DNA of 63,926 bases, filler included, from Octopus bimaculoides (GCF_001194135.2; 6 parts of 6 records of this genome joined end to end with filler, not necessarily neighbours in it), one strand, 5' to 3'; positions 4,232-51,518 are shown, numbered from the whole stretch's first letter. Notes: generated by a model from the letters alone, not told the origin. Numbers and translations: made by a program.

Positions 4232-4402
4232 TATGTATTTATGTATATACCCATTACCTTGAACAAAGGCGGTTCAATTGGTGATGTAATCCTAAAAAGA
4301 CGGGGTTATGATGGGAGTGTCTTTGAGCATAGGATTGCTTAATCTAGATAAACGTCGGCTTAAAGAACGGCAACGATACCTACCACAACGGCAACGACAC
4401 CG

Positions 4403-4436
<34 letters not shown>

Positions 4437-4465
4437 TTACTACTACTACTACTACTGCTACTACA
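4403..4465. repeat. (ACT)n microsatellite
   Basis: Direct tandem ACT run. Confidence 0.95.
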
Positions 4466-5219
4466 ACGATGCTTCTCGTAAGGGAGGTATCTAAACTTAT
4501 CTAATACCATGGCGAAGAAAGGGAAAATCCCAAAGACGCAAACTCTATTTTGTCCTCAGTGTTAAGGTGTGTGCGTGAATTTCACTGACATAGAGGTGTG
4601 TCAGGCATAATACGCGTCAATTTGAGAACCTCTGTTGTAGATGACCTTAGTGGACAAGAATACTTTTTCCCTGTTTTCGTGGTGCAAACAGAATCTTCGA
4701 CTTACCTCTGGCTCTTGTTATCACAGATTAATCCGTTTTTAGAGCTCACGGTTCACAGTTGACTGTACTGTATTATACCGGATTATTGATAAATGGCGCA
4801 GTGATAAACGAGGCTACATGTATAGCTAGCTTTATACATTGGAAGACGAGATATTTGTAACCATATAATTAAGGCTACAAATGTATAAAGCTAGCCATAC
4901 ATGTATGGCAAGCTTTATACATCAGAAGACGAGCTGTCTGAAATTTTCGAATGACAAAAGTACTGCAAAAGGTTGATAGTAAATTAGAGACATTAGCCTC
5001 TCTCTATCACCTTTCAACAAAATTATATATTAAGAAACAGTAGAACAATTAACAACATAATAAAAATAAGTTTTATTTTGGTGATGCTTGGTTTTACAAA
5101 TCCTTTGTCATTCAGCCTAGCAGCCGCTGGTTAACTTGTTGGCATCTGGATATTAAGAGCTTCGTTGAGGCATGCCAAAGGAGCAAGTAGTTGTCACATC
5201 GAAAGCATCGCGCTAAAGA

Positions 5220-7323: not shown

Positions 7324-8129
7324 TAACCAGGCCACTAAATACTTTTAGAGACACATTTTTACTGTAAGATGAGTATGCTAATACTGTAAACAATAAAGAA
7401 AAATAACAAAAGGCGATAGAACGGGGTGACAGTCGGAAACAGATGGTAGGATGTAAACTTCTAAATGAAATTTCACCTGGGTTATAAAAGGAGGTTAATA
7501 TCAAAAGAGAATATCAAAAGAAAAATACATTTTTGAGTCCTTACATTTTAAACGTATGTGAGTGCTTGACGGCTCTGCTTTCATGCTTGAGAGAGCAGAG
7601 ATCAAGCGATAACCTGATAGCTCTATTCAAAACACAAATTAGCCGTAGTTTCACATGCCTATTCTCTTATCATTTTTTTTTTAACTCTCCTTTTATACAG
7701 TCTAAGCTTAACCCAGAAACATGTCTACTGCATACATCTGAGTTTTAATTGCTAGCGAGGACACAGTATTTCGTTTCCCAACAATAATAAATTACCGAGT
7801 ATTAAAGGTTTACAAGTTAATATTGTGCCTTGCTTTTGTAGTATCAGTGCGATTTTCTCATTTTTAAAGTTTATCTCTACAGATTTTCAGAGAATTCAGG
7901 TTCAGCATTGCAAGTAAAAAACGCGATGGAAGATAGAGAAATAGGTAATGGGTATACATTTATATACATGCCTGATATAACGGTTCCCTCGTTGGTCTGC
8001 AAGCTCATTAATTATATTTGAAGTTTAATTAAGACTTCCTGGCATTAATTATATTTCCAGGGTTGTAAGCAGGATTTGAAACCGCGGAGCAGATTTTAAT
8101 GGCTGTAAGCGTTTTGTTTTACTTTTTAT

Positions 8130-8405
8130 TTATTCAATTAGTTAGAGGTGCCAGTTAAAGTTTGTCTTAGGGATGTATAAGGCCGGGTCTTAATCTCGAC
8201 TTGCATAAGTAACTGAGCCCAGAACATTCCCCCCAAAACGAGATGCCAGTGTGGCGCAGAGTTGCCTATTTGTGGTGGAGTGAACTGGAGCAACGTGAAA
8301 TGAGGTGCTTTGTTCAAGAACACAATACATCTCAGAAGTCCAAGAATCGAAACCACCATCTTGCAATCGTAAGTGCAACACTCAAACCACTAAGCTACGT
8401 TTCTT
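8130..8405 (-). mobile_element. tRNA-derived SINE (third family)
   Basis: GGAGTGAACTGGAGCAACGTGAAATGAGGTG...GAATCGAAACC...ACCACTAAGCTACG is the reverse complement of a tRNA-like head plus the TTTCACGTTGCTCCAGT motif also present at 53075-53380. Confidence 0.7.
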
Positions 8406-8637
8406 AACAGCCGGAGGTAAAGGGTAGCAAAATGAGCTTTTAAGTCTTCCAAAACTGATGAAATCGATTAACGCTTATAAATCCACTTTGGTAGGGAGAA
8501 AAGCTCAAAGAATTGTTCTTTCGAAGTATGAAGTGTTTAGTACGTGACTGTGACCTCGCTTGCTTCACTTCAAAGTACACATGTACACAAGGTCTGACAT
8601 ATATAAATAAATGCAAAAATAACCAAGTTTATATATA

Positions 8638-9142
8638 CTAGCGAGACCCGTGAATATTTCACGGAATTAATGGTAAACATATCCAATTAATGGTAAACCT
8701 ATCCAAAAAAAAAACTGAAAGCGTAGCCTGTGTTGTGTCTGTTTCAAAAGATAGCCGCTCATCTGCTAATCATTGAAAAATGAAGGAAATTAGAGGACGA
8801 TGGTTACCTAATGTACTTTATATGTACACTTTGTGTACTTTATTCACAGCACTCTCCCTCTTTTTCTCTCCTTCTCTTACCCTCTTTTTCTCTCTCCCTT
8901 TTCTTTCGCTCTTCGCCTTTCCTTTCAAGTAATCACGTAAAAGCGTTACAGATGGGCTAAGTAACGGAGGAAAAAATTTAATTAGAAGCAAATTACACAT
9001 TTCACTCACCACCACCTTTTCCCTCCATCTCCCACTCCCCACCTCTCTCCTCCAGTCTCACTCTCCCTTGCCTTTCAACTAATCACGGGGAAGCATTACG
9101 GACGACCAAAGTAACGGAGAAACAAGCAGAATTATTATAAGA
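8638..9142 (-). mobile_element. Non-autonomous Helitron (~505 bp)
   Basis: On the minus strand: A|TCTTATAATAA... start; subterminal hairpin CCGTGAAATATTCACGG; ...CTAG|T end. Inserted in an AT dinucleotide without TSD. Confidence 0.8.
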
Positions 9143-9174
9143 TATGTATATATTAATAAAAATGGTTGGAACGA

Positions 9175-9225
9175 GGATATATACATGGATATATACATGG
9201 ATATATACATGGATATATACATGGA
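9175..9225. repeat. 12-bp tandem repeat (GGATATATACAT)x4
   Basis: Four exact copies. Confidence 0.9.
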
Positions 9226-10716
9226 CTGGATTAAGAATAGATACGCAAGTGATCGTTTTCAATTTTGCTGGTCACCGTGCATATGATGATTTATATGGCG
9301 TTGAGTTTAAACATTGCATGGACTGTCTGATGAGATATTGTAGGCATGGATGAGAGGAAGCTAAACAGTATGCCAGATGGTGATTTCGAATAGAAATAGA
9401 ATACAAGTAGCCAGTTCAGAGGATTAGAGGTTGTTATAGTTGCGGCAGAAGAGACCAAGAGGAAACCTGTGGTTCTGTGAGCCAATGGTAGGCTCTCAGT
9501 GGCGTGCGAACTAAATTTTCCATTAATAAAACAGCTCCGCTGCTCCGTAGATGTGTGCAGGTTCCCGTATATGGTTTCATATTTTGGGCAGTCAACTCTC
9601 CAGAAATAAAACATTTCTTTATTTTGAAAAGAATCTTATGAGCCTCTTTTGTATAGTTCTGTCCATGTGAGATCGACATGAGATGATCAGGTATTGTGAG
9701 ATCTAACATATATAGTGACACCGAAGGATTCTGGTGTAGAATGATGCAGTCCACATTTCTGGTGCAGTCCTCGATTCCACGACAATTCATCTTATGTAAA
9801 ACGACTGCTTTGTTTTATTTACTCTTTGTTTCGGTTGACAGAAACCACATTGTCATATCCTCAATTAAAGGTGTTTTTAAGCTCTGTTCACAGGGACAAT
9901 TAATGTCTGGAATGAGACATCGAGCCTGTGTTAAATGGTCTGGTTGATCTCTAATTTTTTGAAATTATTTTCATCGTTATTTTTGCATCTAAATCTACAG
10001 GTTCTTACAGTCATCCAATTGATTCTTCCTTTTCTCTCACATCATCGGATTCAACCTTCATTCTCGGATCTCTGCCACTGGATTCTACTTTGCTTCTTGG
10101 AAATCTCCTGGACTACCATCGGATTACAATTGATATTCAGCTCTTTATTTTCTGCGCATCAAATAACTACGACCCAGTTCACTTCACTTTACTTTCACTC
10201 AGATTCTTCCTCCGTGACCACCACAGCTACGTTAAGCAATTCTACTCCATGCTCTTCTCCTTAACTACATCTAATTTCTTGCAACTCTCTCAACTCCTCC
10301 TTAAAATAACTTGATACTCCAACCCGCAACTTACCTTTACTCATCGCGGCTTTCTTCTACATTTCCACCCCCACATCATATATAACTTCCGTTACAGGAC
10401 CCTACCCTCCTACCCTACCCTCCTACCCTACCCTCCTACCCTACCCTACCCTACCCTACCCTACCCCTACTTCCAAAACCTCGTGACCTTCACCAACCAC
10501 CAACCCATCTGCTTCTCCTCTCTCTTCACTGCCACAAGCCTCATTTTCCGCACCCGGCGCACCCACCGTATACTTTCCTCGCAAATCTATAAACCAAACA
10601 ACTTGAGCCGTCCCATCACCTCACCCGGCGATTACTCAACAGAACTTATATTTAAAAGCTTCGATCTCATCCCTACACCCCCACCACACACACACTCCTA
10701 GTAACTNNNNNNNNNN

Positions 10717-10747
10717 GCCGGGCGAAATGCTTAGCGGTATTTCGTCT
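10717..10747 (+). mobile_element. 5' part of SINE head, interrupted by LINE element A
   Basis: GCCGGGCGAAATGCTTAGCGGTATTTCGTCT matches the SINE head at 51463-51495 (reverse complement), then switches to non-SINE sequence. Confidence 0.85.
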
Positions 10748-10974
10748 CCGTGAGTTTTTTTTTGTTACGCGTCGCACATGCGTTCGTGGTGAAAATTGCT
10801 GTTTATTAGTGTTATTATTTATAATAACTACTCTTTTATTAACTGCTGTTTCTGTTAAATTTCTAACTGTTTTCATTTTGAAAACACTAAGTGCTTGTAG
10901 AAAGCACACGTTTGTTCATTCCCCCGTTGGGGAGAAGAATGTCGTCTAGCGAGAGGCCTAACGTTGGCACATAA

Positions 10975-12080
10975 ATGTCTGGTGAGGCGAACAATTTTTT
11001 GTTGTCTGGCGAGGAGCCAACTACGAGCAAAGAACCAATGGATTCCTCTGAAAAAGGAATTTTTGATTCCCCCGTTGCAAAAAAGTATAACAAAATGTAC
11101 GAGATATTTGGAGATGTGTCTGAAAGCTCGTCAGAACTTTCACAAGAAGATTTCCCGAGTTTGACAAAAAATAGTATTGTGTCCAAGAGAATAATCGATG
11201 TACCTAGCGTCCAGACTGAGAAACCAAATAAGGAAAAAAAAAAATTTTGCGTTGGCAGCTGGGGGTGGAACCCGGCTGCTTTCGACGAACAAGTGTGACT
11301 ATATGAAATATAGAAAAATAATGGAAATAAACGATAACGTGGTTAAAATACAACCACCAGAGCAATTAATACAAGAAGAAAACCAGAAGACAATAACATT
11401 TAAAACTTACTGTTTGCGAAAAAGAAAAATTGAGAGAATTACAGAAGAGAAGATAGAGAAGTGCCTGAAGCCAATCTGGAGCGACGTAGTTTATCTGACA
11501 AGAGGCAGGAAGTTTGGTACGGTGGAAGTAAGGTTTACCAACAAACAAATAGCACAAAAACATTCCGTAGAAACACTGAAAACGGACGACGTGGCGCTTA
11601 TCCCCACCTATATGGGGATGAGAACGTCCTGAATTAAAATAACAAGGGTCCCACCGGAAGTGGATCCTATGTGGTTGGTGGAGGCAGTCCTAATCAAACA
11701 GGAAGAGAAAGTTACCCTCCTCCAGGCTGCCGCTACAGAAAACGCTAACTGGACTGGCCAAACAGTTAGTCTCCTCATCCAGGCTGGCCCAAAACTAATT
11801 GAAGCCATTCCCGAGACAATTCAGATAGGGGGGAGACCCTCGTGGTGTTTGTTGAGGGCCGAAAATTCCGATGCTTTTTGTGCGGCCAATTCGAAGGAAC
11901 TGCAAGGAAAATGAGGAAGAGGAGAAAGAAGAAAAAGAAGAAAAGACGAGGAAAAAACAAACAAAAGAAAAATACAATCAGCAACTCAACCGAGAGCGGC
12001 GACTACTACAGAACAACGACCAAAAAAGACTGCAAGAAGAGGAAAAGAGGAGAAAGGCATAATAGCCGTATACACTAAAG
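10975..12080 (+). pseudogene. LINE ORF1 (RRM-like region plus degenerate zinc knuckle), frameshifted
   Basis: Fragments ...IEKCLKPIWSDVVYLTRGRKFGTVEVRF...IPTYMG..*IKITRVPPEVDPMWLVEAVL...EGRKFRCFLCGQF align with ORF1 of elements B, C and D. Frameshift in a poly-A run near 11235 and a stop at 11630. Confidence 0.7.
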
Positions 12081-12449
12081 ATACTGAGCTAATGAGAGAC
12101 ATTCAATTAATTAAGACAGCAAAAAAAATAGATAACCTTTCGGAGAAATACAACAATTATGACGTGTATGAAGTCTCAAATAAGACTCAGAATTTTACAA
12201 AACAAATATCGTTATACAGTATCATCTATGAGACTGGACTTTAATAAGTCTATATTTAATGGACTACCAGCCCCGATCCCGCGAGAAAAGGAAAAGGTGG
12301 AGACCCCCCACCTCTAGCTGATAATTCTGTGTCGGTAATGAAACGGGATTTTAACAAATCTATTTCCCAAGACCTTCCACCTCCGACCCTGTATCAAAAA
12401 AAGGTGGAGGGTCCCCCTCCACCGGACAGCCCTGATTAACAGGTAAGTC

Positions 12450-13006
12450 ATGTCTATTCAAATTGGTTGTATAAATGTTCGTGGCTTGATGTCTAGCTGG
12501 AAGCAAGGACGCTTCCTAAATGACATCAGGTCAAGGAAATTGGATGTGATTGTTGCAACGGAAACCCGAGTAAAGGGGCCAAGAAATCTGTCCCTCCTCC
12601 TGAATGGCTATGAGAAATACGTTTCTCTGAGTCGGGCGGGAGGTGAGGGTAGGGTATTGGTCCTTCTAAAAAGAAACCGGGTAGCCGAGAAAAGGTTGTT
12701 TTTTTCTGATCCAGAAGGCAGGCTGGTCGTTCTTGACCTGACATTCAGTTATGGCAAGATAATCAGGCTAGTTGCTATTTATGCACCCAATATTATGGGC
12801 CCGCAAAGTGAATATTTTCTTGACCTGGGCAAGTTCCTGGCCACGTCACATTCGCTAGTATTGTTAGGAGACTTTAACACAATATGTGAGGCACACACAG
12901 ATTGTGTTGGCTCGAACATGAACAGAAAATGTAACTCAGGCTTATGGGATCTGCTAAGTCACTTTCAGCTAGCAGATCCATATAGGTTGGAACACCCGAA
13001 CACTCC
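12450..13006 (+). pseudogene. LINE ORF2 N-terminus, APE-type endonuclease, truncated
   Basis: IGCINVRGL, LDVIVATETR, EGRLVVLDL, RLVAIYAPN, VLLGDFN, LADPYRLEHP motifs. The ORF runs into antisense SINE sequence at 13007. Confidence 0.9.
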
Positions 13007-13052
13007 ACCTCGGCGGAATTTGAACTCAGAACGTAACGGCAAACGAAATACC
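13007..13052 (-). mobile_element. SINE segment GGTATTTCGTTTGCCGTTACG...CCGAGGT abutting the LINE 3' tail
   Basis: Reverse complement continues the SINE exactly where the head at 10717-10747 was interrupted. Confidence 0.85.
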
Positions 13053-13642
13053 AATTTCTTTATTGCCTACGGGGGGCTAAACGTAGAAATGTACAAAACA
13101 ACTGATTGGGATCAGTAATGCGATATGGTTTACATAAAATATGACTCGAATGATATTAACAGTACATAGACAACACAAATGAAGCGATGATCAGGCCACG
13201 CTCCGACCCCACAAACCCCGATCTATTGCTGGTACCTTTTTTGTTCTCTTTTTTTCCGTCTATTCACACGGTTCCTTGCACGCACAATACTCGTGCAACA
13301 TGCTTCCATCTCTTTTGGAACGTATACTCCGACAGACATCTCCTCTCCAGCCACACTTTCCTTTTCAAATGAAAAGTAAAAAATGAACGTAAATTGTGGC
13401 CAGAGATAAAGTTGCCTGTCTTAATTCCTTTTATCCTAGTCTTCCATACTGCCTCTTTCGCTATTGCTACAACCGTGAGAAAACAATTCTTACCTTCGTT
13501 TGTTAAAACTCCCGGTGGGTCAATTTTTATAATTGACTCAGTCGACAGCTGTACTCTTCCTTCGCCGGACAACAGGTGTTCGGCATAAGCCCACATTTCA
13601 GATATCTCCGGACACTGAACAATAGCGTGAGGGACGGTTTCC
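13053..13642 (-). mobile_element. Inverted 3' end of Tx1-like LINE (ORF2 C-terminus, 3' UTR, tail)
   Basis: Minus strand ETVPHAIVQCPEISEMWAYAEHLL...VAIAKEAVWKTR...KRWKHVAR (end of the ORF2 CCHC region), stop at 13264, tail TTTAGCCCCCCGTAGGCAATAAAGAAATT. Confidence 0.85.
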
Positions 13643-13762
13643 CTTTGCCTTTCATCCTTTCAGGGTCTATTAAATAAGTACCAGTTGCGCACTGGGATCG
13701 ATGTAATCGACTTAATCCCTTTGTCTTTCCCTGTGTGTCCCCTCTATGCTTAGCCCCTTGTG
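13643..13762 (+). mobile_element. 3' part of the interrupted SINE
   Basis: CTTTGCCTTTCATCCTTTC...AAGTACCAGTTGCGCACTGG...TGTCCCCTCTATGCTTAGCCCCTTGTG. Confidence 0.85.
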
Positions 13763-14479
13763 TGTGTATACAAAGTATGGTGGTTTAGTTCACGGGTGAT
13801 CTAAACGATTAAGTACGCTAGGTAAGTGCTGTAACAGATTACTAGGGCTCCAAGGTTATAGCCGAGACGGTAGTTATAGAGCCATTGCAGATTTCCCATG
13901 CAGCGGATATATTCTGTTATTGAACGTTGATATGTTCGCGTCTTTTTTCTCTGGATGTTTACTATATCAAGATTTTAACCCACATGGATTTATGCAGGAT
14001 CGTACCTAAGGACTTATGCTCTTGTTTCTCCAGCATCGGAAAGTTGAACTATGACCTTTTAAACTTCTTTTTTTTCTTCTCTCTCTTCCTCTCCTTATAC
14101 CTTTTCTCCCTTCCTCTATGTCATCATGTCATTAATATATACCATTCTCATTTTCCCTATTTTTCCCTGTTTGCCTCTGATGACAGAATCACGTATCCGG
14201 GGATATCCTAGAAACAGCTGTAAGACTGAATTTTTTCCGATAATAATATTGTATATGACTTGAGATGCTTGCCTTGCCTTAACATTTGTTGTCCTCTTTC
14301 ACAATTATGTATATATATATATTTGGGCAAATTCTCTTGCAGCCCGAGAGAAAATTTAAAGTGCACAGGCACTTAATTTGACGACTATGTTTCATGGGTG
14401 CAGTTCCATTGATCTTGAGAATCAAATATCGATTGCAACGGTTAGAACCGACAATCTTAAGTGTTAAGAAAATACATGT

Positions 14480-14920
14480 TACAACAATCTGAGAATGCTG
14501 AAATAACTGAGGAACCCCACAGCAATTTAGGCCAAGTTTCGTTAATCAGTTAATCAAAAATCATCTTACTCTTTGCTTGAGTGATCTAGGTAAAAATCTA
14601 TTTTTCTCAACCTATCTTTAGCGCATCTGTGTATAAAATTTCAAGAAAATCGGTTGAAAACTTTAAAAGTTATGGCAGAAAATAACATTCATATGAGAAT
14701 TTGCGTTGAAATGTCCTATTGATTTTTGAAAAATCGATGCTGATTAACAATTATCGATTTTTTTGAAATTCCAAGTGCGTAAGTGACCGCATGGGTATAA
14801 GCCCCACACACGTGTCAAGTTTAATCAAGATCGGTTGGATAGTCTCGGAGGAGTTAAAGTAACAAATTCACAAACACACACAGCGACAGACAGAAATTGC
14901 CATTTATGTATATATATAAA
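14480..14920 (-). mobile_element. Probable non-autonomous Helitron-like repeat
   Basis: AAGTTTAATCAAGATCGGTTGGATAGTCTCGGAGGAGTT...ACAGACAGAAATTGCCATTTATGTATATATA layout resembles invertebrate Helitron-derived repeats; other terminus not resolved. Confidence 0.45.
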
Positions 14921-15520
14921 AATATATATATATATATATAATAAATGTGAAAACAAATTTCTGTGAGTCAGTGTGTCACACTTCGACCCCCTCTCTCACT
15001 ATTCATTGACACTCGTACTATTGCTCATGTTGGGGTGATAGTAATAAGTAATAGTATGAGCTGTAGTTGTGATAGAGGCAGAGGCGACGGTGATGATGGT
15101 GGTAGCTGAAGCAGTCAGGGACAATGGTGGTGGTGGCAGCTGAAGCTGAGAGTAAGTGATGTGAAAGACAGTGGTGAAGGTGATGGAGGTGAAGGCGACG
15201 AAGTCAAAGGTATTGATGGTGGTGGCGTGAGAAGTCTGAATGGTGCGTGTATTTCAGTTGTGGTGGTGATGGTGGTGGTACTGGTGATGGTGATGGGTGA
15301 AAACAATCAACAGAAAGTGAGAGAGAAAGAAAGAGTTTAGACAGAAAAACTACGTGTACCGACCCCTGAATGGGAAGACAAAAAATGTTATTTATCATGC
15401 TGCTTTGCTATAAGTTCCAAATCGACAAATTATATCATTGTTTTGATGAAAATTGTTGATTGCTTCAAAAATATTGGTCAAGTATAATAAAATTTAATAT
15501 GTACTTGATGGATACATATG

Positions 15521-15547
15521 GCGAAACGCTTAGCGGTATTTCGTCTG
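15521..15547 (+). mobile_element. SINE-head remnant at the 5' junction of element B
   Basis: GCGAAACGCTTAGCGGTATTTCGTCTG, then TGTGAGTTT. Confidence 0.8.
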
Positions 15548-17371
15548 TGTGAGTTTACTGGTCGGACGTGTTATTACTCGCTGCGATTTTTTTTTTTAGT
15601 ATAACGCCACTATTGTTTGGTGGGCGTTACTGAGATGGAGAAAATGAAGACGTATGCAGCAGCGACGAGGAGTCGAGCTTCCGTCGTCCCAGGCCTGCTG
15701 AAGCAATATGAAATACATTGGAATGAAGACATGGCTGAGAAAATTGGAAAATATAAAGAAATGATAAAGAAGGAGGGGCCAAACGTAAAGTTGACCCTAT
15801 CAGAGGAGGAAAAGACGAAAATGGAAATTGGAGTCGTGGAATATAAATAATTTTCAAGGAAAAATAAAAGAATAGAGAGTACAATGAAAGAGGAGGTGGA
15901 GGAGTGTTTGAAGGAATTGCAAGATGTGTCGTTTTTTTACAAGAGACAAGACATACGCGTCTGTAGAGATCACATTTGTGTCGGAGGAGGCAGTAAAGAA
16001 ATACGCCAATAAGACGTTAACTAAAGGAAATTGGATGCTCTTTCCCAATAAGTTGGGTAGACCTCCAACGTGGATTAAAGTGGGTAAGATCCCACCGAAA
16101 ATAGAGTTGGAAGGGGTAATGGCAGCAGTTTTTCCTGAAGGAGAGGGAGAAGAAGTAAGGATAATTATGATAAGCAGAACCCAACAAATAAATTATTGGG
16201 GGTATAGATTGGAGGTGCTTTTTACGGCAAGTCAGAAAGTTTACAGTGACATACCGGAGACACTGGAACTACCTAACGAGGACAAACTGGACATAATGTT
16301 GGAGGGGAGACCTCCAAAGTGCTATGAATGTGGCAAAAGAGGTCACATTAGAAGAAGGTGCCCAGAAATAATGGAAAACAAAGAAATGGTAACGCAAGAA
16401 GGCGTGATAGAGGAGAGGAAACAGTCACAGGAAGAGGAGTAGAGAGCTGATTTTGAGGAAGCTAAATCAAGGAAGAAAGAAAGGAGGATCTCATCGCCGA
16501 AAGTCGAACAAGGGAAAAAATGCAAATCACAGGATCAAGTGGGATCACTGAGGAAAGAGGATAATAGCAGAACATTACCACAGAACCATACAGTCTCACA
16601 ATCGCACAGACAGATACACAGATGCATAAACACACAGACATACATACACTCGGAAGCGTAGAAGATAACGCAGAATTGCAGAAACCTAAAAGCACAGAAC
16701 CTGAAAACACAGACACACAAACACAACATGCAGACTTACAGTCACACAAACATGGAGACCCACAGACAAACACACAGATATACAGTCACAAAGAAATATA
16801 GAAGAACAGACGCATGGTAGTACAGAATCACAAAAACAAAAAATAACAGACATACAGACGCAGGAGGTACATAGGAACGGCATATATTTAATGTCATATC
16901 GATATACACAAAAAATAGAAAAGAAGATATCCATAATAAAAGACATTGTCAAAGTGGACCTCTCAGACGGTTGCGATAAGGAGATGAGATGAATCTTAAT
17001 AGAAAAAGAAAAGTATAAAAAATTTAAAGAGGCTTCCCGACAGATATAAACCCACTGGGGCCCGAGGTGAATTTCGAACCCAGCGCTCCAGTGGTGAACT
17101 ACGAGGAAATAAAAGATTATATAAAATGGTGAGTAGTTTTATTTTGGATAAATTATTGAGATAATTTTGAAAAGAACTATCGAAGACTGTGAAAGGAACT
17201 ATTGAGAACTGTTGAAATAATTGAAATAACGCTGCCGCCCCGGGGTGGGGCTGGGGTGGCCGTCCCATCATCATTGTTTAATTTCATTGTTCCATTCTAT
17301 CATGTGTTAATTGTCCCCGCATGTGTGTATTGTCCCATCTGTGTTTAACCCCTTGTGGGTAATAAAGAAAT
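15548..17371 (+). mobile_element. ORF1-only non-LTR retroelement (element B, ~1.8 kb, HAL1-like)
   Basis: 5' UTR, ORF1 with CYECGKRGHIRRRC knuckle, no endonuclease or RT, shared 3' tail ...CCCCTTGTGGGTAATAAAGAAAT, followed by CGGTATTT (duplicate of the 5' flank) before a gap. Confidence 0.8.
15635..17035 (+). pseudogene. ORF1 of element B (gag-like CCHC, RRM-like region), with stops and a frameshift
   Basis: MEKMKTYAAA...VEYK*FSRK...FTRDKTYASVEITF...LEGRPPKCYECGKRGHIRRRC..., low-complexity linker, then IEKKISIIKDIVKV...ILIEKEKY. Confidence 0.75.
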
Positions 17372-18011
17372 CGGTATTTNNNNNNNNNNNNNNNNNNNNN
17401 NNNNNNNNNNNNNNNNNNNNNNNNNNNNNNNNNNNNNNNNNNNNNNNNNNNNNNNNNNNNNNNNNNNNNNNNNNNNNNNNNNNNNNNNNNNNNNNNNNNN
17501 NNNNNNNNNNNNNNNNNNNNNNNNNNNNNNNNNNNNNNNNNNNNNNNNNNNNNNNNNNNNNNNNNNNNNNNNNNNNNNNNNNNNNNNNNNNNNNNNNNNN
17601 NNNNNNNNNNNNNNNNNNNNNNNNNNNNNNNNNNNNNNNNNNNNNNNNNNNNNNNNNNNNNNNNNNNNNNNNNNNNNNNNNNNNNNNNNNNNNNNNNNNN
17701 NNNNNNNNNNNNNNNNNNNNNNNNNNNNNNNNNNNNNNNNNNNNNNNNNNNNNNNNNNNNNNNNNNNNNNNNNNNNNNNNNNNNNNNNNNNNNNNNNNNN
17801 NNNNNNNNNNNNNNNNNNNNNNNNNNNNNNNNNNNNNNNNNNNNNNNNNNNNNNNNNNNNNNNNNNNNNNNNNNNNNNNNNNNNNNNNNNNNNNNNNNNN
17901 NNNNNNNNNNNNNNNNNNNNNNNNNNNNNNNNNNNNNNNNNNNNNNNNNNNNNNNNNNNNNNNNNNNNNNNNNNNNNNNNNNNNNNNNNNNNNNNNNNNN
18001 NNNNNNNNNNN

Positions 18012-19651
18012 AATGACTCGTGAACCGAAACGAGCCCTTGCTGGGAGCTGTGCTTCTGCGGCTGGGAGCTGTGCTTCTGCGGCTGGGAGCCGCATCACCG
18101 CGACGGATTCGCTGGAGGTACGAGAAGTCATAATTGAACCTGAGAAGTTGGAAGAGTACAAGGAACTGGTCCAGAAGGAGGAGTCATGTTTGAAGTTGAC
18201 CCCCGCCCGAGGAAGTAACCAACAAAACGAGGACAGTGGTTTACAGAACGCTGTCCATAACCAGTAAGAAGATTGAGATGGCAGCAGAGGAAGCCATTGA
18301 GAAATGTCTGGAAGAAGTAAAGAGTGTTGTAACATTCTATTCTAGAGGAAGAAGATATGGCACAGTGGTAGTGAGGTTTGCCACCGAAGAAGAGGCAATA
18401 AATCACTCCGCTGTGCCGCTTAGATCACAAGAATGGGTGCTCCTGCCGACCCACTCGGCAAAAGAGTCGCAAGAATTAGGATAGGCAGGGTGCCACCTGA
18501 TATTGAAGAAGCGTGGCTGGTAGCAACCGTGATGTACGGAACCCAAGAAGACACAAAGGTAATACAAGTGGCAAGAACAAAAAAAATGAATTGATGAGGT
18601 TACGGCCTGGAAATAGTTATCCAGGCCACCCAGCAAAACCTGAAAGAAATAGCAGAAGAGGCGTTGCTACCTGAAGATATAAGGCTGAGAGGGGTGATAG
18701 AGGGAAGATAGCCCACCTGCTACCACTGTGGAGAAAAGGGGCACATTAAAATAAAGTGCTCCCAGATAAGCAGTAAAACCACAGAAAACCAGCATGAACA
18801 AAGTAGGAGTACATATTATAACGATATTGGTCTGTAAGAAAAACAGCTCCATGACGCAATTCAGCATGAACAAAGTAGGAGTACCCAGCCCAGGAGAAGG
18901 GTATGGAAGACACAGAGGAGGAGGGATTTACCGAAGTACCCAAAAGAAAGAAAAGGGAAACGGTAAATACACCCCCGAAAAGCACAAAGAAGAGGAAAAA
19001 GACTAATACAGAAGACATTGTACAACAAACACACAACACACAAGATACACTCACACAGCATACATCAGCACCAGTAACACAAAAAAAAGGAAACCGCCCC
19101 AGCTAGTCCGAGTTCACCTCGTAGACAAACAGACACAGACAGGCATAACACACAGTCCCTCAAAAGTCCCCGTAAAAACAAAGCGTATATTATGACGTAC
19201 ACAAAAAGCACGGCAATCAAACGAAAAATTACCAAATTCAAATCGGTGATTAAAGTGAAATTACTGGCTGTGGAATATACAGAAGATACTAAATGTATAC
19301 TAATAGACAAGGAAAGGTACGCTAAATTAAGGAAATTGTTCGGATCAAACATTGACCTATTAGTAGTGGAGGCGGTGGATGATGCCCTACCTCCAGTCGT
19401 GGACTTGGACGATTTGAGACCGTATATAAACTGGTAAAATAATGTAAGTTTTAAGATCATATAAAAAGAATAAAAAACTGAAAAGATTTTTTGATAAAAA
19501 ACAGTTAAATCGTACTACTGGAGAGTGGGATTCGAGTAGCCATCGCACCTCCATTTATTTATAATTTATTTTCATTCATTCTTTGTTTTATGACTCCACT
19601 TTGTGTTGTCTGTCCCTTCTATGTTGGGCTCTCAATGGCCAATAAAGAAAT
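18012..19651 (+). mobile_element. ORF1-only non-LTR retroelement (element C; 5' end lies in the gap)
   Basis: ORF1 homologous to B (IEKCLEEVKSVVTFYSRGRRYGTVVVRF; IEGR*PTCYHCGEKGHIKIKC); terminal ORF segment 19192-19437; tail ...GGCCAATAAAGAAAT; no ORF2. Confidence 0.75.
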
Positions 19652-20189
19652 ATTTTATGTGGATGCATATATATGAGAGAGATAGCGAGAGAGAACGAGA
19701 TTATGTGTGTGCGATATGCAAATGGCCGAATACGTGCGCCCCTCTGTATGTGTATTTAAACTGGTTCTGACTGCATAATAAAATATCTAAATTTGTATCT
19801 GGTCACTTTTGTTGAAACGTATTGTGTGTGAAATTAATTTTTAATTTCCACACATTTACATTAACGTCAATGAACTTCAAGGCCCACCCTGAGGTGTCTG
19901 GTGCTATGTGCTATTTGATGTTGCAGCTTGCAAGTTTCCTCACGCAAAACGACTGAAAGTTTTCGACTAAGTGAAAATACTTACTGACAAGATTCTAGTT
20001 CCTTACGGAGAAATAAGCAGACCAATATCGTTTTATGTACTCTTCTACCCGGCTTGTTGTTCGGCACAAAACTGATTCACCGAGGAGATTAAAATGTTTG
20101 TGATTTCTTCAGTATTGTTGACGACTGTAAGAACACTTAACCTTTAAACGGTGAACCTATCATTCGATGCTTCAAACCTTTCACATGGA

Positions 20190-20290
20190 TACGGCCACCA
20201 CGAAAGGGAAGTAAATATTTTTACAGCATTTTTCCATAATGAGATTGTAGATTTTACTGTACGAAAGACTAACAATTATAGTTTTTGGAC
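20190..20290 (+). mobile_element. Possible piggyBac-like transposase N-terminal remnant
   Basis: Translation VNIFTAFFHNEIVDFTVRKTNNY resembles the F..FF..EI...IV..TN.Y motif; short, no catalytic region. Confidence 0.3.
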
Positions 20291-20604
20291 TTATTTAAAG
20301 AGAAAATCGATATAAAAATTGCCCTTAAGAAAAAGNNNNNNNNNNNNNNNNNNNNNNNNNNNNNNNNNNNNNNNNNNNNNNNNNNNNNNNNNNNNNNNNN
20401 NNNNNNNNNNNNNNNNNNNNNNNNNNNNNNGACATACACACTATAAAATAGACATACTCCAGGGCTGAGTACCCAATGAATATTTCTAACTTAAAGCAAT
20501 CAAAAAAATAAAACAGGCAATCGATTTTCTGTTTATATCTACTCGACTTTTATTGGTTCTACTGATCTCCACCTCTGTGATGCTAATCGATGTGAAAATA
20601 TATG

Positions 20605-20771
20605 TAATGGTTGTGTGGTTAAGAAGCTCCCTTTGTGACTATGTGGTTTCAGGTTCATTCCCACTGCGTGGCACCTAAAGCAAGCGTCTTCTGTTATAGT
20701 GCCGGGTTAACCGGTGCCTTGCGAGTGAAAATGAGTAGATGGAAACTGTGTGGATTCCCATCGTGTGTATG

Positions 20772-20806
<35 letters not shown>

Positions 20807-21055
20807 GTATATATGTATATATATATGTGTGTGTGTGTGTGCGAGTGTGTGCAGGCGTGAGTTCGCGTTTGTCCCCATACAGATAGCGGCAACCAGTGTT
20901 GGTTTTTTCCGTCCCTATACATTAGCGGTTCATCAAAAGAAACCGATAAAATAAGTACCAGCTTTAAGAAATAATGGAATCGATTTGTTTACCTAAATCC
21001 CTCCAAAGCAGTGCTCCAGCATGGCTGCAGTCCAGTAGCTGAAACCAGTAAAGAA
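20605..21055 (+). mobile_element. Near full-length second-family SINE with internal microsatellite
   Basis: Head (GGTTCATTCCCACTGCGTGGCACC), (TA)n(TG)n tract, 3' part ending GTGCTCCAGCATGGCTGCAGTC...GAAACCAGTAAAGAATA. Confidence 0.8.
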
Positions 21056-22113
21056 TATAAATTCTTTTACCCAATTCTTTAAAATATTCTTTAATGTTGC
21101 TACTGCAGAAAAAGTTTTAATTCTGACGAGATACTAACTGAAAAATCAAAGCAATGGTAATAAATACCGACAATCATTTAATCCGGCACACTAACCTCCA
21201 TCTCAATTCACATATTTAAACCACAATTTAAGTGCTAATTCTTCTTTTGTTGGTTCGGATTTCTTTTATAATTTCTTACAACGGTGCATGGCCAAAATTT
21301 TATGTGAGGGTATATTCGATTATATCGATCTGTATATATGATTGATACTTTATTTTAGCTGCCCTGAATAGGTGAAAGTCGAAGGAACCAGATTTATAAA
21401 CCGTAAGACATTTTATCCGAAGCTCTGAAGATTTTATCGATCCACCTCTTCACTTCCTTTATATTTTATCTCTAATATAGGTACAAGGTGTGAAATATTA
21501 GAGGTGGAGAGAATAATCGATTAGCTGGACCCTAATAACTGACTGGAATTTTTTAATACTATTGACCTCAAAGTAAGAACGTCAAAATCAACTTTGGTCT
21601 GATTGGAACTCAGAACTTAGAGATCCGTAGACATTTCGTCCAAAGCTCTGAAGACTACTGCATCAATTCATTCTACAGATTTTATTTTTGAAATGTTTTA
21701 CACAGTTCAAATCATGTCAATAGTAACTTTTCCTTTCACACCCCTGAAAACCATAACATGATTCATCGCTAGAACACGCTCCAAGAGAACATTTTCAACA
21801 TGAAACATTATTCTCAATGAAATGTAAAATGTTATAATCAAACTCAAGGCACCGTCACAGTTGCCAAGTTCTTACCCAAAATTCCAATTCTAAAATCAAT
21901 TTGTGTTGAAGCCATTCTGCCAATTCAGCAGAATTTTTCAGGCAACCACAACAACAACTGAAATACAAATAGACCAGCAACAATGCAAACGGGCCGGCTC
22001 GACCGCATAAAGAACAGTAAGAGTCAACACAAAAAGCAAAGTTAAAATTTTTCATACAGCGTTTGTGTCTCATTTCTGAATTTCTTCCTTTTCTTTTTCA
22101 GACTCAAAACTCA

Positions 22114-22273
22114 ATGGTAACACATAAACATGATACAGGAGATGATAAAGATAAATCAGATGATCGTGGGCAGTGGGGCAATAAGGCAGAGTTTATGCTG
22201 TCCTGCATAGGATTATCTGTTGGACTTGGTAACGTTTGGAGATTCCCCTATTTGGCGTTCAAACATGGAGGAG
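22114..22273 (+). CDS. First coding exon of an SLC6 sodium:neurotransmitter symporter family transporter (amino-acid type)
   Basis: [36 protein letters not shown] is the SLC6 TM1 signature. Acceptor TTTTTCAG at 22094-22101; donor G|GTAAAC at 22273/22274 (phase 1). The scaffold ends before downstream exons. Confidence 0.92.
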
Positions 22274-22550
22274 GTAAACATATTCATAATTTCTTTGATT
22301 TCTTTAATAGTTTAATGCGTGTGGTTATAATCTGTCTTGAGTTTACAAACTTGTTTCACTGCAATTTTAGTTGTGTTGAAGCGAGTGAGATATATATATA
22401 TATATATATATAATACAATTGATATGTGAGCTGTGCATATATACATACCTACATCTACATGTATATATAGATGCATATCCGGATACAGGACGTCAAAAAA
22501 ATGTGATAGATGTATATATGTGAGATATATATATATATATGTATATATGT

Positions 22551-22594
<44 letters not shown>

Positions 22595-23131: not shown

Positions 23132-24089
23132 AGACGAAATACCAATACCACCTACTGCAGTGTGTAACTGAAGGAGCCTACGTTTAGATACGTGTTGGTA
23201 GCGTGAGATTCCACCTTCTGTAATGGAATACATGTTGAGAAGAATGGAATTACCACAGGACATTTAATTTGAAAAACTGGAAAAAATAAGTCAAACGTAA
23301 ATTTTGTGAAAAAGGGGGAAAGAAAAAAAAGATTATCAAGAAAAAAAAATGTATATACTTAGACTTTTTATATAAAAGAGAAAAAAACTGTATAAATGTA
23401 ACCACTCGACTTTCGGGATCGAGTGGGCATTGCACCTCATTTTCATTCTTTCATATTATCATTCGTTTCTTTCATTTTTTCTTCTGATTTCATCTTTTTG
23501 TAATTTTTTGTTCCCCGAGTTTATGCTTGTCGCGTATGTATTGTCTTTATGTGTTGTAATAGTCGAAGAGATTTTCTCTGTCGCCTTTTATAGGTAATAA
23601 AAAATCGATTCGCGCCTGTATGGGCAATAATAAAACCAAACCCAATTGTAGTAATATTGCTTTGAGTTCTCGTAACCACCTCCTCCCTTTTCAATTGGAT
23701 ACGTCTACAAAAGTAATGGAGAACAAATTAATACACTACATAAATATAGGTTTTCCGGTAAGTTACAAATAACAAAGGTATTAATGATCAGTGATATACA
23801 AGTTTCACTATCCTTGCTAATATATGAATCATATATTCTTGTTTGACCTGTGACAATGTCAGTACAGTTCAAAAAGCCAGTAATAGTAGCTAATTGAGAT
23901 AGTTTGTTCGTTCGTTTAAATCTTTAAAAAATAGCGGTACCCCCAGACAAATTGATATACCTCACGTACATAAAACGGTCCTGTTCATACATAGTGTGGC
24001 TGAGTAAAACTTAAGTACTATTAGCAAGAGATGTAACATTTTACTACTTCTACACCCGGGCAAATGTCGGAACCCTTAATTCCCTGCAA

Positions 24090-51124: not shown

Positions 51125-51518
51125 ATGTTTCTTATTTCTTTATTGCCCACAAGGGGCTAAACATAGAGGAGACAAACAAAGACAAAGGGACTAAGTCGAT
51201 TACATCGACCCCAGTGCGTAACTGGTACTTAATTTATCGACCCCGAAAGGCAAAGTCGACCTCGGCGCAATTTGAACTCAGAACGTAACGGCAGACGAAA
51301 TACCTATTTCTTTACTGCCCACAAGGAGCTACACACAGAGGGGACAAACTGATCAAGTCGATTATATCGACTCCAGTGCGTAATTGGTACTTAATTTATC
51401 GACCCCGAAAGGATGAAAGGCAAAGTCGACTTCGGCGGAATTTGAACTCAGAACGCAGTGGCAGACGAAATACCACTTAGCATTTCGCCCGGCGTGCTAA
51501 CGTTTCTGTTGGCTCGCC
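51125..51518 (-). mobile_element. Tandem dimer of the Tx1-tailed Meta-type SINE
   Basis: Full head-body-tail unit (51305-51518) followed directly by a second unit starting at GGTATTTCGTCT (51293-51304). Confidence 0.9.

What the first reader, a model, noticed from the sequence alone, without database searches (positions are those of the whole stretch)
10717..17379. Tx1-like retroelements that insert at one fixed site inside the SINE they mobilise (self-targeting LINE/SINE system)
Seen in sequence: element A begins right after ...GCTTAGCGGTATTTCGTCT (10747) and element B right after ...GCTTAGCGGTATTTCGTCTG (15547). Both starts read (C/T)GTGAGTTT. Their 3' tails (AATAAAGAAAT) are followed directly by GGTATTTCGTTTGCC (13052-13038, minus) and CGGTATTT (17372-17379), a ~12-13 nt duplication of the same SINE-head sequence. 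The same 12-mer marks the 5' junction of element E (23132-23143) and the SINE-SINE junction at 51293-51304, so four insertions on three scaffolds share it. Established knowledge: Tx1-clade LINEs often have sequence-specific APE endonucleases (Tx1L/Tx2L into Tx1D/Tx2D; Dewa, Keno, Mutsu, Kibi, Koshi into tRNA spacers, U2, 5S or microsatellites). Inference: this family targets the tRNA-derived head of its own SINE between the A and B boxes. That would give it an expanding, harmless landing pad and inactivate that SINE's Pol III promoter at each insertion. I do not know of this being described in cephalopods, but I cannot check.
Basis: partly seen in the sequence, partly recalled or inferred. Interest (0 to 1): 0.92.

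Follow-up and report, generated by a model that had tools for sequence, protein, structure and literature searches.

The report
LINE insertions at one SINE-head site
In this octopus-type DNA, two unrelated-looking copies of a Tx1-like jumping gene sit at exactly the same nucleotide inside a short repeat (SINE) that shares their tail. This is a new target for a known kind of site-preferring retroelement, but strict "self-targeting" is not shown.

Summary
Two independent target-primed insertions share one site, CGGTATTTCGTCTG, which is positions 47-60 of a ~231-nt SINE. The 3' junction is the same to the nucleotide in both, and the target-site duplications are 12-16 bp. One element carries ORF1 plus an APE-type endonuclease. 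Its 3' end lies inverted next to it, which is best read as one insertion later inverted and internally deleted. The other element has ORF1 only. The two share no detectable DNA beyond a GTGAGTTT start and a ~45-nt tail that the SINE also carries.

The endonuclease scores higher against mollusc "YTX2-like" (Tx1 ORF2-like) proteins than against human L1. A Patella relative sits site-specifically in U5 snRNA genes. No reverse transcriptase is in the window, so clade membership stays unproven.

Three results argue against a strict self-targeting system:
- A third ORF1-only element with the same tail end is not followed by SINE sequence.
- The only complete SINE copy I could fetch (Octopus vulgaris) has an empty site and lies in non-SINE DNA.
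- Relatives in another cephalopod have other flanks.

Verdict: a real site preference, a new member of a known kind, moderate interest.

The parts
10717..10747 (+). Head fragment of host SINE copy 1 (about SINE positions 29-59). It ends in the left copy of the target-site duplication, (C)GGTATTTCGTCT at 10735-10747. A 10-N gap hides its 5' end.
   Evidence: Matches the Octopus vulgaris SINE copy in L012.
10748..13006 (+). LINE 'A', 5' portion. It starts CCGTGAGTTT and has a 5' UTR. The decayed ORF1 (frameshifts and stops) has an RRM-like block at 11444-11611 and a broken CCHC region near 11860-11900. ORF2 codes residues 1-186 of the endonuclease, from 12450. It breaks off at about 13002-13009.
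   Evidence: Pfam Exo_endo_phos, E 1e-9. ORF1 similarity to element D by tblastn. Nucleotide homology to Logan LINE copies ends at window 13001.
13007..13053 (-). Middle of the same SINE (positions 47 to about 93), inverted. On the minus strand it reads TGGTATTTCGTTTGCCGTTACGTTCTGAGTTCAAATTCCGCCGAGGT. This is the right copy of the duplication plus the downstream SINE.
   Evidence: (98% over 51 nt).
13054..13641 (-). LINE 3' end. It holds the C-terminal 125 codons of ORF2 (13267-13641, beginning ETVPHAIVQCPE, the His/Cys half of the C-terminal zinc motif), a 3' UTR, and the tail ...TTTAGCCCCCCGTAGGCAATAAAGAAAT (tail end at 13054-13064).
   Evidence: (relatives at 58-61% identity, one with PF13966 zf-RVT).
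13643..13772 (+). 3' part of host SINE copy 1 (CTTTGCCTTTCATCC...TTAGCCCCTTGTG). It resumes 3 nt after the point where the inverted middle fragment stops. Its last ~14 nt of tail are missing.
   Evidence: Compared with the L012 SINE.
15520..15547 (+). Head fragment of host SINE copy 2, 5'-truncated (starts near SINE position 33). It ends in the left duplication copy CGGTATTTCGTCTG (15534-15547).
15548..17371 (+). Element 'B', an ORF1-only non-autonomous LINE derivative. It starts TGTGAGTTT. ORF1 runs 15635-16442 with one stop and one frameshift; the 172-codon ORF at 15924-16442 carries a CCHC knuckle. There is no ORF2. The tail is ...TTTAACCCCTTGTGGGTAATAAAGAAAT.
   Evidence: (zf-CCHC, E 5e-5).
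17372..17379 (+). Right duplication copy of B: CGGTATTT, cut off by a 632-N gap.
18012..19651 (+). Element 'D', a second and more diverged ORF1-only element. Its 5' end is lost in the gap. The tail ...CAATGGCCAATAAAGAAAT is followed by ATTTTATGTGGATGC, which is not SINE. This is a counter-example or a family with another preference.
   Evidence: (38% ORF1 identity to B).

Best explanation
Two separate target-primed reverse-transcription events placed two diverged members of one L1/Tx1-group LINE lineage at the same position of a partner SINE.

The two elements:
- One was originally an ORF2-bearing LINE. It is now inverted and deleted, and is seen as parts A and C.
- The other is an ORF1-only derivative, B.

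Proposed steps:
1. The element-encoded APE-type endonuclease nicks the bottom strand exactly 5' of CGGTATTTCG, at SINE position 47.
2. The LINE RNA, ending ...AAUAAAGAAAU, is reverse-transcribed from that nick.
3. The top strand is cut 12-16 nt downstream, which produces the duplicated CGGTATTTCGTCT(G).

The same SINE carries the same ~45-nt 3' tail, so it is a plausible trans-mobilised partner. Every SINE copy therefore adds a potential landing site. I read this as a strong sequence preference rather than obligate specificity, because elements with this tail also land elsewhere.

Shown: the junctions, the duplications, the independence of the two elements, the endonuclease type and the shared tail. 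Inferred: that the endonuclease itself reads the motif, that B is moved in trans, and that insertion disables the SINE.
For: - Both events have the same 3' junction to the nucleotide: tail | (C/T)GGTATTTCG. Their 5' junctions are within 1-3 nt of each other.
- The motif is over-represented (3 exact hits and one 1-mismatch hit against 0.14 expected at up to one mismatch), and all three exact hits abut element ends.
- A and B share no blastn-detectable DNA, while their SINE flanks are 96-100% alike. They are therefore not copies of one composite.
- All three SINE fragments in the piece that include the site are interrupted there.
- The inverted SINE middle ends at ...GAGGT and the plus-strand SINE resumes at CTTTGCC. 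Only CGA is missing compared with the intact O. vulgaris copy. A's 5' junction and the minus-strand 3' junction therefore belong to one SINE and one insertion.
- Pfam calls the domain Exo_endo_phos.
- Relatives by bit score: 'YTX2-like protein' of Mya arenaria 80 bits; a 1153-aa Patella ORF2 52 bits; human L1 endonuclease structures 33 bits.
- That Patella relative is inserted twice at the same point of U5 snRNA genes in a tandem array.
- In another cephalopod, two related LINEs lie head to tail and each tail is followed by TTATTCTYARTGSAAGT.
- Tx1-clade LINEs are documented to target other transposons, and their SINEs share those targets (PMC4494074).
- The SINE, B, C and D tails align over about 45 nt.
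Against: - There are only two events, in a window chosen because it showed them.
- Element D, with the same tail end, has a non-SINE 3' flank.
- The one intact SINE I could fetch has an empty site. It is itself inserted in unique DNA with a 21-nt duplication, AGTATATTTTCAATGTTTTCA. The machinery that reads this tail is therefore not confined to the site.
- LINE relatives in Logan contigs of another cephalopod have other 3' flanks.
- The assembly is a gapped draft, and B's 3' flank is only 8 nt long.
- There is no RT domain in the window, so Tx1 membership rests on endonuclease similarity and an annotator's name.
- No read-level or genome-wide test was possible (searches found nothing).
Confidence: 0.62

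Rival explanations
1. One reading: an obligately site-specific LINE/SINE system. All members, including the SINE itself, insert only or mainly at this one site in the SINE head, and the SINE serves as an evolved, self-expanding safe haven.
For: The same junction evidence as for the best explanation. The tail is shared with the SINE. There is precedent for a LINE and its SINE sharing a transposon target, and for tandem SINE insertions around a duplication (PMC4494074).
Against: D is not in a SINE. The complete O. vulgaris SINE copy lies in non-SINE DNA with its own 21-nt duplication and has an unoccupied site. SINEs make up about 11.6% of the O. vulgaris genome and are dispersed (PMC13282606), which an obligate SINE-in-SINE mode could not produce.
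Confidence: 0.15
2. One ancestral insertion into a SINE, after which the composite (SINE head - element - SINE rest) was copied by retrotransposition from the SINE's own tail or by segmental duplication. The shared junctions would then be inherited rather than independent.
For: The SINE's 3' end carries the tail that the RT recognises, so a composite could in principle be re-mobilised. B's host SINE is 5'-truncated, as a retro-copied composite could be.
Against: A and B have no detectable nucleotide similarity apart from 8 nt at the start and the tail, whereas the flanking SINE pieces are nearly identical. The 5' junctions differ in filler bases (CC versus T) and in duplication length.
Confidence: 0.08
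3. Template-switch chimeras. RT copying a SINE RNA pauses in the structured head, jumps to the 3' end of a LINE RNA, and later jumps back. This would produce LINE-in-SINE retrocopies in a single event without endonuclease specificity.
For: The junction lies in the head of a Pol III-type RNA, where pausing is plausible. The tail end and the site form a small palindrome, GAAAT-nGGT-ATTTC.
Against: A 12-16-nt direct duplication with a nucleotide-exact 3' junction is what staggered nicking predicts. Two independent jumps would not predict it. Neither of the two diverged elements shows a 5'-truncated insert at the left junction.
Confidence: 0.05
4. Assembly artefact. In a gapped short-read draft, repeats were joined wrongly, so the nesting, and especially the inverted A/C arrangement, is not real.
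For: N gaps lie directly beside two of the four junctions (10707-10716 and 17380-18011). The A/C arrangement needs an inversion plus a ~3-kb deletion.
Against: The junctions have no long shared k-mers that could mislead an assembler (microhomology of 3 nt or less), so these junction sequences must exist in reads somewhere in the genome. The two SINE fragments at the inversion fit to within 3 nt, as one broken SINE would.
Confidence: 0.07

Closest known systems
Tx1L/Tx2L of Xenopus laevis and other target-specific Tx1-clade LINEs (Keno in U2, Mutsu in 5S, Kibi/Koshi in microsatellites; Kojima & Fujiwara 2004, as summarised in PMC4494074)
   Same: ORF1 plus an ORF2 with an N-terminal APE-type endonuclease. 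Insertion at one sequence with a short target-site duplication. The target is often another multicopy element. The best named relative of this endonuclease is 'YTX2-like'.
   Different: The target here is the head of a SINE that shares the LINE's own 3' tail. The 3' end is a defined AATAAAGAAAT tail shared with a SINE. Specificity appears incomplete. RT-based clade placement was not possible.
Tx1-Mar LINEs and SINEU of crocodilians (Kojima 2015, PMC4494074)
   Same: A Tx1 LINE group and the SINEs it mobilises. The target is a transposon family, with tandem insertions sandwiching a duplication. Target preference ranges from 13% to 90% depending on the family.
   Different: There the common target is a third party (Mariner-N4_AMi). 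Here the target lies inside the partner SINE itself, and I found no evidence that the SINE shares the preference.
U5-snRNA-specific LINE of Patella caerulea (cluster of P0137, seen here in L013)
   Same: A mollusc relative of the endonuclease (31% identity, 52 bits) with EN-RT-zf-RVT architecture. It has nucleotide-exact repeated insertion into a small-RNA-type sequence.
   Different: Its target is a functional tandem gene array (U5) and its duplication is 4 nt (TTAC). The relationship to the octopus element is distant.
HAL1 (half-L1) ORF1-only derivatives of mammalian L1
   Same: Elements B and D keep the 5' UTR, ORF1 and 3' tail but lack ORF2, so they must use ORF2 protein in trans.
   Different: Different clade. 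ORF1 here is the RRM-like plus CCHC type. B retains the site preference of the autonomous lineage.
R1/R2 in rDNA; Dictyostelium TRE and yeast Ty3 at tRNA genes
   Same: The 'safe haven' logic of inserting into multicopy or Pol III-type sequence.
   Different: R2 uses a restriction-like endonuclease. TRE and Ty3 are tethered by Pol III factors and land beside the gene, not inside it. None of them targets a SINE.

Membership tests
Tx1 clade of non-LTR retrotransposons | ORF2 with an N-terminal APE-type (Exo_endo_phos) endonuclease | tested here: met
   Pfam PF03372, E 1.1e-9, on residues 22-148 of the 187-aa fragment.
Tx1 clade of non-LTR retrotransposons | RT domain groups with Tx1 in an RT phylogeny (RTclass1-type test) | not testable with these tools
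   No RT sequence is in the window; it was deleted between about 13003 and 13641. No reference Tx1 RT set was available.
Tx1 clade of non-LTR retrotransposons | Endonuclease closer to Tx1-type than to L1-type proteins | tested here: inconclusive
   80 bits to 'YTX2-like protein [Mya arenaria]' against 33 bits to human L1 endonuclease structures. However, 'YTX2-like' is an annotator's name, and no other clades were compared.
Tx1 clade of non-LTR retrotransposons | C-terminal Cys/His motif after the RT (zf-RVT type) | tested here: inconclusive
   The window keeps only the ...ETVPHAIVQCPE half. The relative P0003 carries PF13966. The 110-aa window ORF, which starts just after that motif, gave no Pfam hit.
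Target-specific LINE (criterion of Kojima 2015: one sequence in more than 20% of flanks of a family) | The same target sequence flanks a large share of copies genome-wide | not testable with these tools
   Only 2 events in SINE against 1 (D) not in SINE in the piece.
Target-specific LINE (criterion of Kojima 2015: one sequence in more than 20% of flanks of a family) | Independent insertions at the identical nucleotide, with a target-site duplication | tested here: met
   A/C and B: tail|(C/T)GGTATTTCG in both, with duplications of 12-16 nt. The elements are unrelated at the DNA level.
LINE-SINE partner pair (shared 3' tail) | The SINE's 3' end is homologous to the LINE's 3' end | tested here: met
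   About 45 nt are alignable among the SINE, B, C and D. The O. vulgaris SINE ends TTTAGCCCCTTGTGGGTAGTAAAGAAAT and LINE C ends TTTAGCCCCCCGTAGGCAATAAAGAAAT.
LINE-SINE partner pair (shared 3' tail) | The SINE shows the same target preference as the LINE | tested here: not met
   The single complete SINE copy available (L012 10145-10375) is in non-SINE DNA with the duplication AGTATATTTTCAATGTTTTCA. This is n=1.
tRNA-derived SINE (SINE2) | The head is recognisable as a tRNA, with A and B boxes | tested here: not met
   ARAGORN found nothing. Rfam at E up to 10 found nothing on the intact copy. Only box-like strings are visible by eye (GTTAGCACGCTGG; GAGTTCAAATTCC). Octopus SINEs are reported to be tRNA-derived in the literature (Ohshima & Okada 1994, cited in PMC4758252).
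HAL1-like ORF1-only non-autonomous LINE derivative | 5' UTR, ORF1 and 3' tail retained, ORF2 absent | tested here: met
   B (1824 nt) and D (at least 1640 nt) have an ORF1 with a CCHC knuckle and no EN or RT similarity.

The most novel reading that the evidence does not exclude
A Tx1-like LINE lineage whose endonuclease recognises a motif in the head of the very SINE that parasitises it. SINE amplification would then create the LINE's landing pads, and each LINE insertion would split and silence a SINE copy. This would be a self-referential LINE/SINE feedback loop not described for any Tx1-type element in the papers I could search.
Probability: 0.3. Interest if true: 0.7.

Novelty: new member of a known kind. 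Interest (0 to 1): 0.5.

Why it matters
If the preference holds genome-wide, it adds a SINE head to the list of Tx1-type targets (DNA transposons, snRNA and 5S genes, microsatellites). It would also give a natural case in which a LINE's target is supplied by its own non-autonomous partner. That bears on three questions: how octopus genomes built their very large SINE/LINE load, how nested repeat arrays form, and how APE-type endonucleases acquire new sequence specificities. It also warns annotators that SINE halves flanking LINEs in cephalopod assemblies are real structures and not fragmented hits.

Tried and rejected
**Closed or empty routes**
There is no read support, no allele test and no genome-wide junction census.
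- Exact-pattern scans for the SINE tail and SINE head in metagenome, GTDB genome and viral contigs found nothing.
- An exact look-up of the window's 172-aa ORF1 was not on record.

**Searches with limited yield**
- Protein searches with the EN and the ORF2 C-terminus found only 2 hits each, from another species.
- I built a chimeric query from SINE reading frames across an empty and a filled site, hoping to count the two classes. It found only one protein, an O. vulgaris 'hypothetical protein' that is a SINE read-through. This did give 20 kb of O. vulgaris DNA.
- Logan contigs (L001-L011, L014-L021) all come from one run series of a different cephalopod, whose SINE is diverged at the site. They could not test the site itself.
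- Literature searches found no description of this target in cephalopods. One search was uninformative.

**Ideas considered and dropped**
- Twin priming as the origin of the A/C inversion. Target DNA (duplication plus SINE middle) lies between the two LINE segments, which twin priming does not produce.
- The SINE head being the LINE's own 5' end. The 3' flank continues the SINE from the duplicated bases.
- The AATAAAGAAAT at 9613-9623 (minus) as another tail. No element similarity lies next to it.
- tRNA identity of the head. It was not detectable.

Full report
**Scope and limits**

I worked only on places 7324-22594. That removed any check of the junctions against reads, any census of junctions in the genome, and any test for empty and filled alleles. 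No searchable DNA collection held cephalopod sequence. Extra cephalopod DNA came only indirectly, through protein look-ups.

**What is in the sequence**

The piece is AT-rich, repeat-rich, gapped draft DNA of octopus type. A SINE copy from Octopus vulgaris chromosome OX597819.1 is 92% identical to the SINE pieces here. Three LINE-derived bodies lie within 9 kb.

*Body A/C*
- A SINE head fragment, ...GCCGGGCGAAATGCTTAGCGGTATTTCGTCT, ends at 10747.
- It is followed by CCGTGAGTTT..., a 5' UTR, and an ORF1 riddled with stops and frameshifts.
- From 12450 there are the first 186 codons of an ORF2 that Pfam calls Exo_endo_phos.
- At about 13002-13009 this stops abruptly and the sequence continues on the opposite strand. 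Read on the minus strand it has, in order:
  - the last 125 codons of an ORF2 (from ETVPHAIVQCPE);
  - a 3' UTR;
  - the tail TTTAGCCCCCCGTAGGCAATAAAGAAAT;
  - one T;
  - GGTATTTCGTTTGCCGTTACGTTCTGAGTTCAAATTCCGCCGAGGT, which is SINE sequence.
- On the other side of this inverted block, from 13643, the plus strand resumes with CTTTGCCTTTCATCC...TTAGCCCCTTGTG, the 3' part of the SINE.

In the intact O. vulgaris copy the SINE reads ...CCGAGGTCGACTTTGCC.... The inverted SINE middle and the plus-strand SINE 3' part are therefore contiguous apart from 3 nt. That fit is very unlikely for unrelated fragments. I conclude that there was one SINE and one originally complete LINE insertion with canonical junctions. 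A later inversion took the block [LINE 3' part + duplication + SINE middle], and about 3 kb of LINE (the rest of EN and the RT) was lost. Twin priming does not fit, because target DNA lies between the two LINE segments. A misassembly cannot be excluded without reads, but the breakpoints share 3 nt or less, so a k-mer assembler would not have invented them.

*Body B (15548-17371)*
- It has a 5' UTR, an ORF1 with a CCHC knuckle, no ORF2, and the tail TTTAACCCCTTGTGGGTAATAAAGAAAT.
- It is preceded by ...GGCGAAACGCTTAGCGGTATTTCGTCTG and followed by CGGTATTT and then 632 N.

*Body D (18012-19651)*
- It is a second ORF1-only element. Its ORF1 is 38% identical to B's.
- Its tail ...CCAATAAAGAAAT is followed by ATTTTATGTGGATGC, which is not SINE.

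**Is it more than chance?**

- GGTATTTCGTYT occurs 3 times exactly, plus once with one mismatch, against 0.14 expected at up to one mismatch.
- Each exact occurrence is within 0-2 nt of an element end.
- Both 3' junctions are at the same bond: tail|CGGTATTT in B and tail|TGGTATTT in A/C. The T is a likely CpG-deaminated C.
- The 5' junctions are GTCT|CC-GTGAGTTT and GTCTG|T-GTGAGTTT.
- The duplications are therefore CGGTATTTCGTCT(G), 12-14 nt. For A the duplication could be up to 16 nt if CCG is read as SINE with one base lost.
- On the intact SINE the site is at positions 47-60 of 231.

**Are the two events independent?**

A and B share no blastn-detectable similarity (word size 9, E 1e-3). 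The only exceptions are the 8-nt start and about 45 nt of tail. Their SINE flanks, by contrast, are 96-100% alike. The filler bases and duplication lengths also differ. A single ancestral composite that was later copied is therefore unlikely. Host SINE 2 is 5'-truncated (it starts near position 33) and is flanked by unique DNA.

**What kind of LINE?**

- The endonuclease fragment finds 916 proteins at E<1e-3 among 1.84 billion representatives.
- Named relatives are 'YTX2-like protein' of Mya arenaria (80 bits; YTX2 is the Swiss-Prot name of the Tx1 ORF2 product) and a 1153-aa Patella caerulea ORF2 (52 bits) with EN-RT-zf-RVT architecture.
- Human L1 endonuclease structures score only 33 bits.
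- The Patella proteins have consecutive locus tags. In the fetched locus the element sits in U5 snRNA genes of a 3.4-kb tandem array, twice, at ...CGCCTTTTAC|TAAAG, with a TTAC duplication. U5-targeting Tx1 families are listed in PMC4494074.
- This makes 'Tx1-like, from a lineage prone to site specificity' plausible. With no RT in the window, formal membership is untested.
- L1-Tx1 families are reported as abundant and recently active in O. vulgaris (PMC13282606). I found no paper describing this target.

**LINE-SINE partnership**

The SINE, B, C and D align over the last ~45 nt. The O. vulgaris SINE ends TTTAGCCCCTTGTGGGTAGTAAAGAAAT. That is the classic signature of a SINE using a stringent LINE's RT.

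**Evidence against a strict self-targeting system**

1. D is not in a SINE.
2. The intact O. vulgaris SINE has an unoccupied site. It is itself flanked by a 21-nt duplication of unique DNA, AGTATAT(T/G)TTCAAT(G/A)TTTTCA.
3. In 20 kb of O. vulgaris DNA there is no other copy and no LINE of these families.
4. Relatives in Logan contigs of another cephalopod (67-73% nucleotide identity) end in similar tails but are followed by other sequences. The homologous SINE in that species has a diverged, empty site, CTTAGCGGCATTTAGTTTGGC.
5. SINEs make up about 11.6% of the O. vulgaris genome and are dispersed, so most SINE insertions cannot be SINE-in-SINE.

One of those foreign contigs carries two LINEs head to tail. 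Both tails are followed by TTATTCTYARTGSAAGT (15 of 19 identical). This is the 'tandem insertion sandwiching a duplication' pattern that Kojima describes for target-specific Tx1 and SINEU elements. Site preference thus seems to recur in this lineage with different targets.

**Mechanism proposed**

1. The APE-type endonuclease nicks the bottom strand opposite the G|C step of ...TTAGC|GGTATTT.
2. Reverse transcription starts on the ...AAUAAAGAAAU 3' end.
3. A top-strand nick follows 12-16 nt downstream.
4. Full-length cDNA is joined with 1-2 filler bases.
5. ORF1-only derivatives use ORF2 protein in trans and inherit the preference.

The junction anatomy is shown. The claim that the endonuclease reads the motif is inferred from what is established for Tx1L and other APE-type site-specific LINEs (as summarised in PMC4494074). 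The head could not be confirmed as a tRNA, so 'between the A and B boxes' rests on box-like strings seen by eye.

**Verdict**

It is best explained as a Tx1-like LINE lineage with a strong preference for one site in the head of its partner SINE. This is a new target for a known behaviour. The attractive 'self-targeting system' reading is possible (about 0.3) but unproven, and some of the little outside evidence I could obtain argues against it. Interest is moderate, at 0.5.

Noticed in passing
L013 (Patella caerulea JAZGQO010000002.1, 56394710-56418171), 5' junctions near 2770 and 22054, 3' junction at 14293: A 1153-aa EN-RT-zf-RVT LINE (cluster of P0137, proteins with consecutive locus tags) is inserted at the same point of U5 snRNA genes (...CGCCTTTTAC|TAAAGATTTCC, in the conserved loop 1) in a 3.4-kb tandem array, with a TTAC duplication. 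Intact U5 copies lie at 17624-17738 and 21023-21138.
   Followed up: partly
L019 (Logan SRR11869394 contig), 1-600 and 4400-4960: Two related LINEs lie head to tail in another cephalopod. Both tails (...CTCTTGTGGACCATAGAAAATC and ...CTCTTGTGGGTAATACAAAAC) are followed by TTATTCTYARTGSAAGT (15 of 19 identical). This suggests repeated insertion at one target with a ~20-nt duplication.
   Followed up: partly
window 12995-13010 and 13637-13650: The two breakpoints of an inversion carry the LINE 3' end plus 46 nt of SINE. The SINE pieces on either side fit to within 3 nt (CGA lost), and about 3 kb of LINE (the rest of EN and the RT) is missing. It could be a post-insertion rearrangement or a chimeric assembly.
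   Followed up: partly
window 13040-13064 (minus) and 17361-17379: The tail end and the target form a small palindrome across the 3' junction: GAAAT-(C/T)GGT-ATTTC. I could not tell whether it has any role in target choice.
   Followed up: no
window 22102-22278 (+): This is an exon encoding the N-terminal start of a sodium:neurotransmitter symporter (Pfam SNF, E 1.5e-15; ...[36 protein letters not shown]). The repeat cluster lies a few kb upstream of, or inside, an SLC6-type gene.
   Followed up: partly
window 8170-8400 (minus) and 20598-21050 (plus): Two other SINE families are present. The second shares the central ...AATAAGTACCAG... block with the SINE studied here and ends ...CCAGTAAAGAATAT, a tail end similar to AGTAAAGAAAT. 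Several SINE families may use the same LINE group.
   Followed up: no
window 10385-10470: A run of CCCTA/CCCTACCCTCCTA units, (TAGGG)n-like on the other strand, lies inside a proline/threonine-rich-looking open frame and just before the 10-N gap that precedes the SINE head.
   Followed up: no
L012 10001-10351 (Octopus vulgaris OX597819.1): An annotated 'hypothetical predicted protein' of O. vulgaris (P0173, 116 aa) is half SINE read-through (…AKCLAVFRLPLRSEFKFRRGRLCLSS…). It is almost certainly not a real gene.
   Followed up: yes
window 9613-9623 (minus): A further exact AATAAAGAAAT is followed by GTTTTATTTCTGG. This flank resembles those after D (ATTTTATGTGG) and after some foreign LINE tails (TTTTATT...). 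No LINE or SINE similarity lies next to it.
   Followed up: partly
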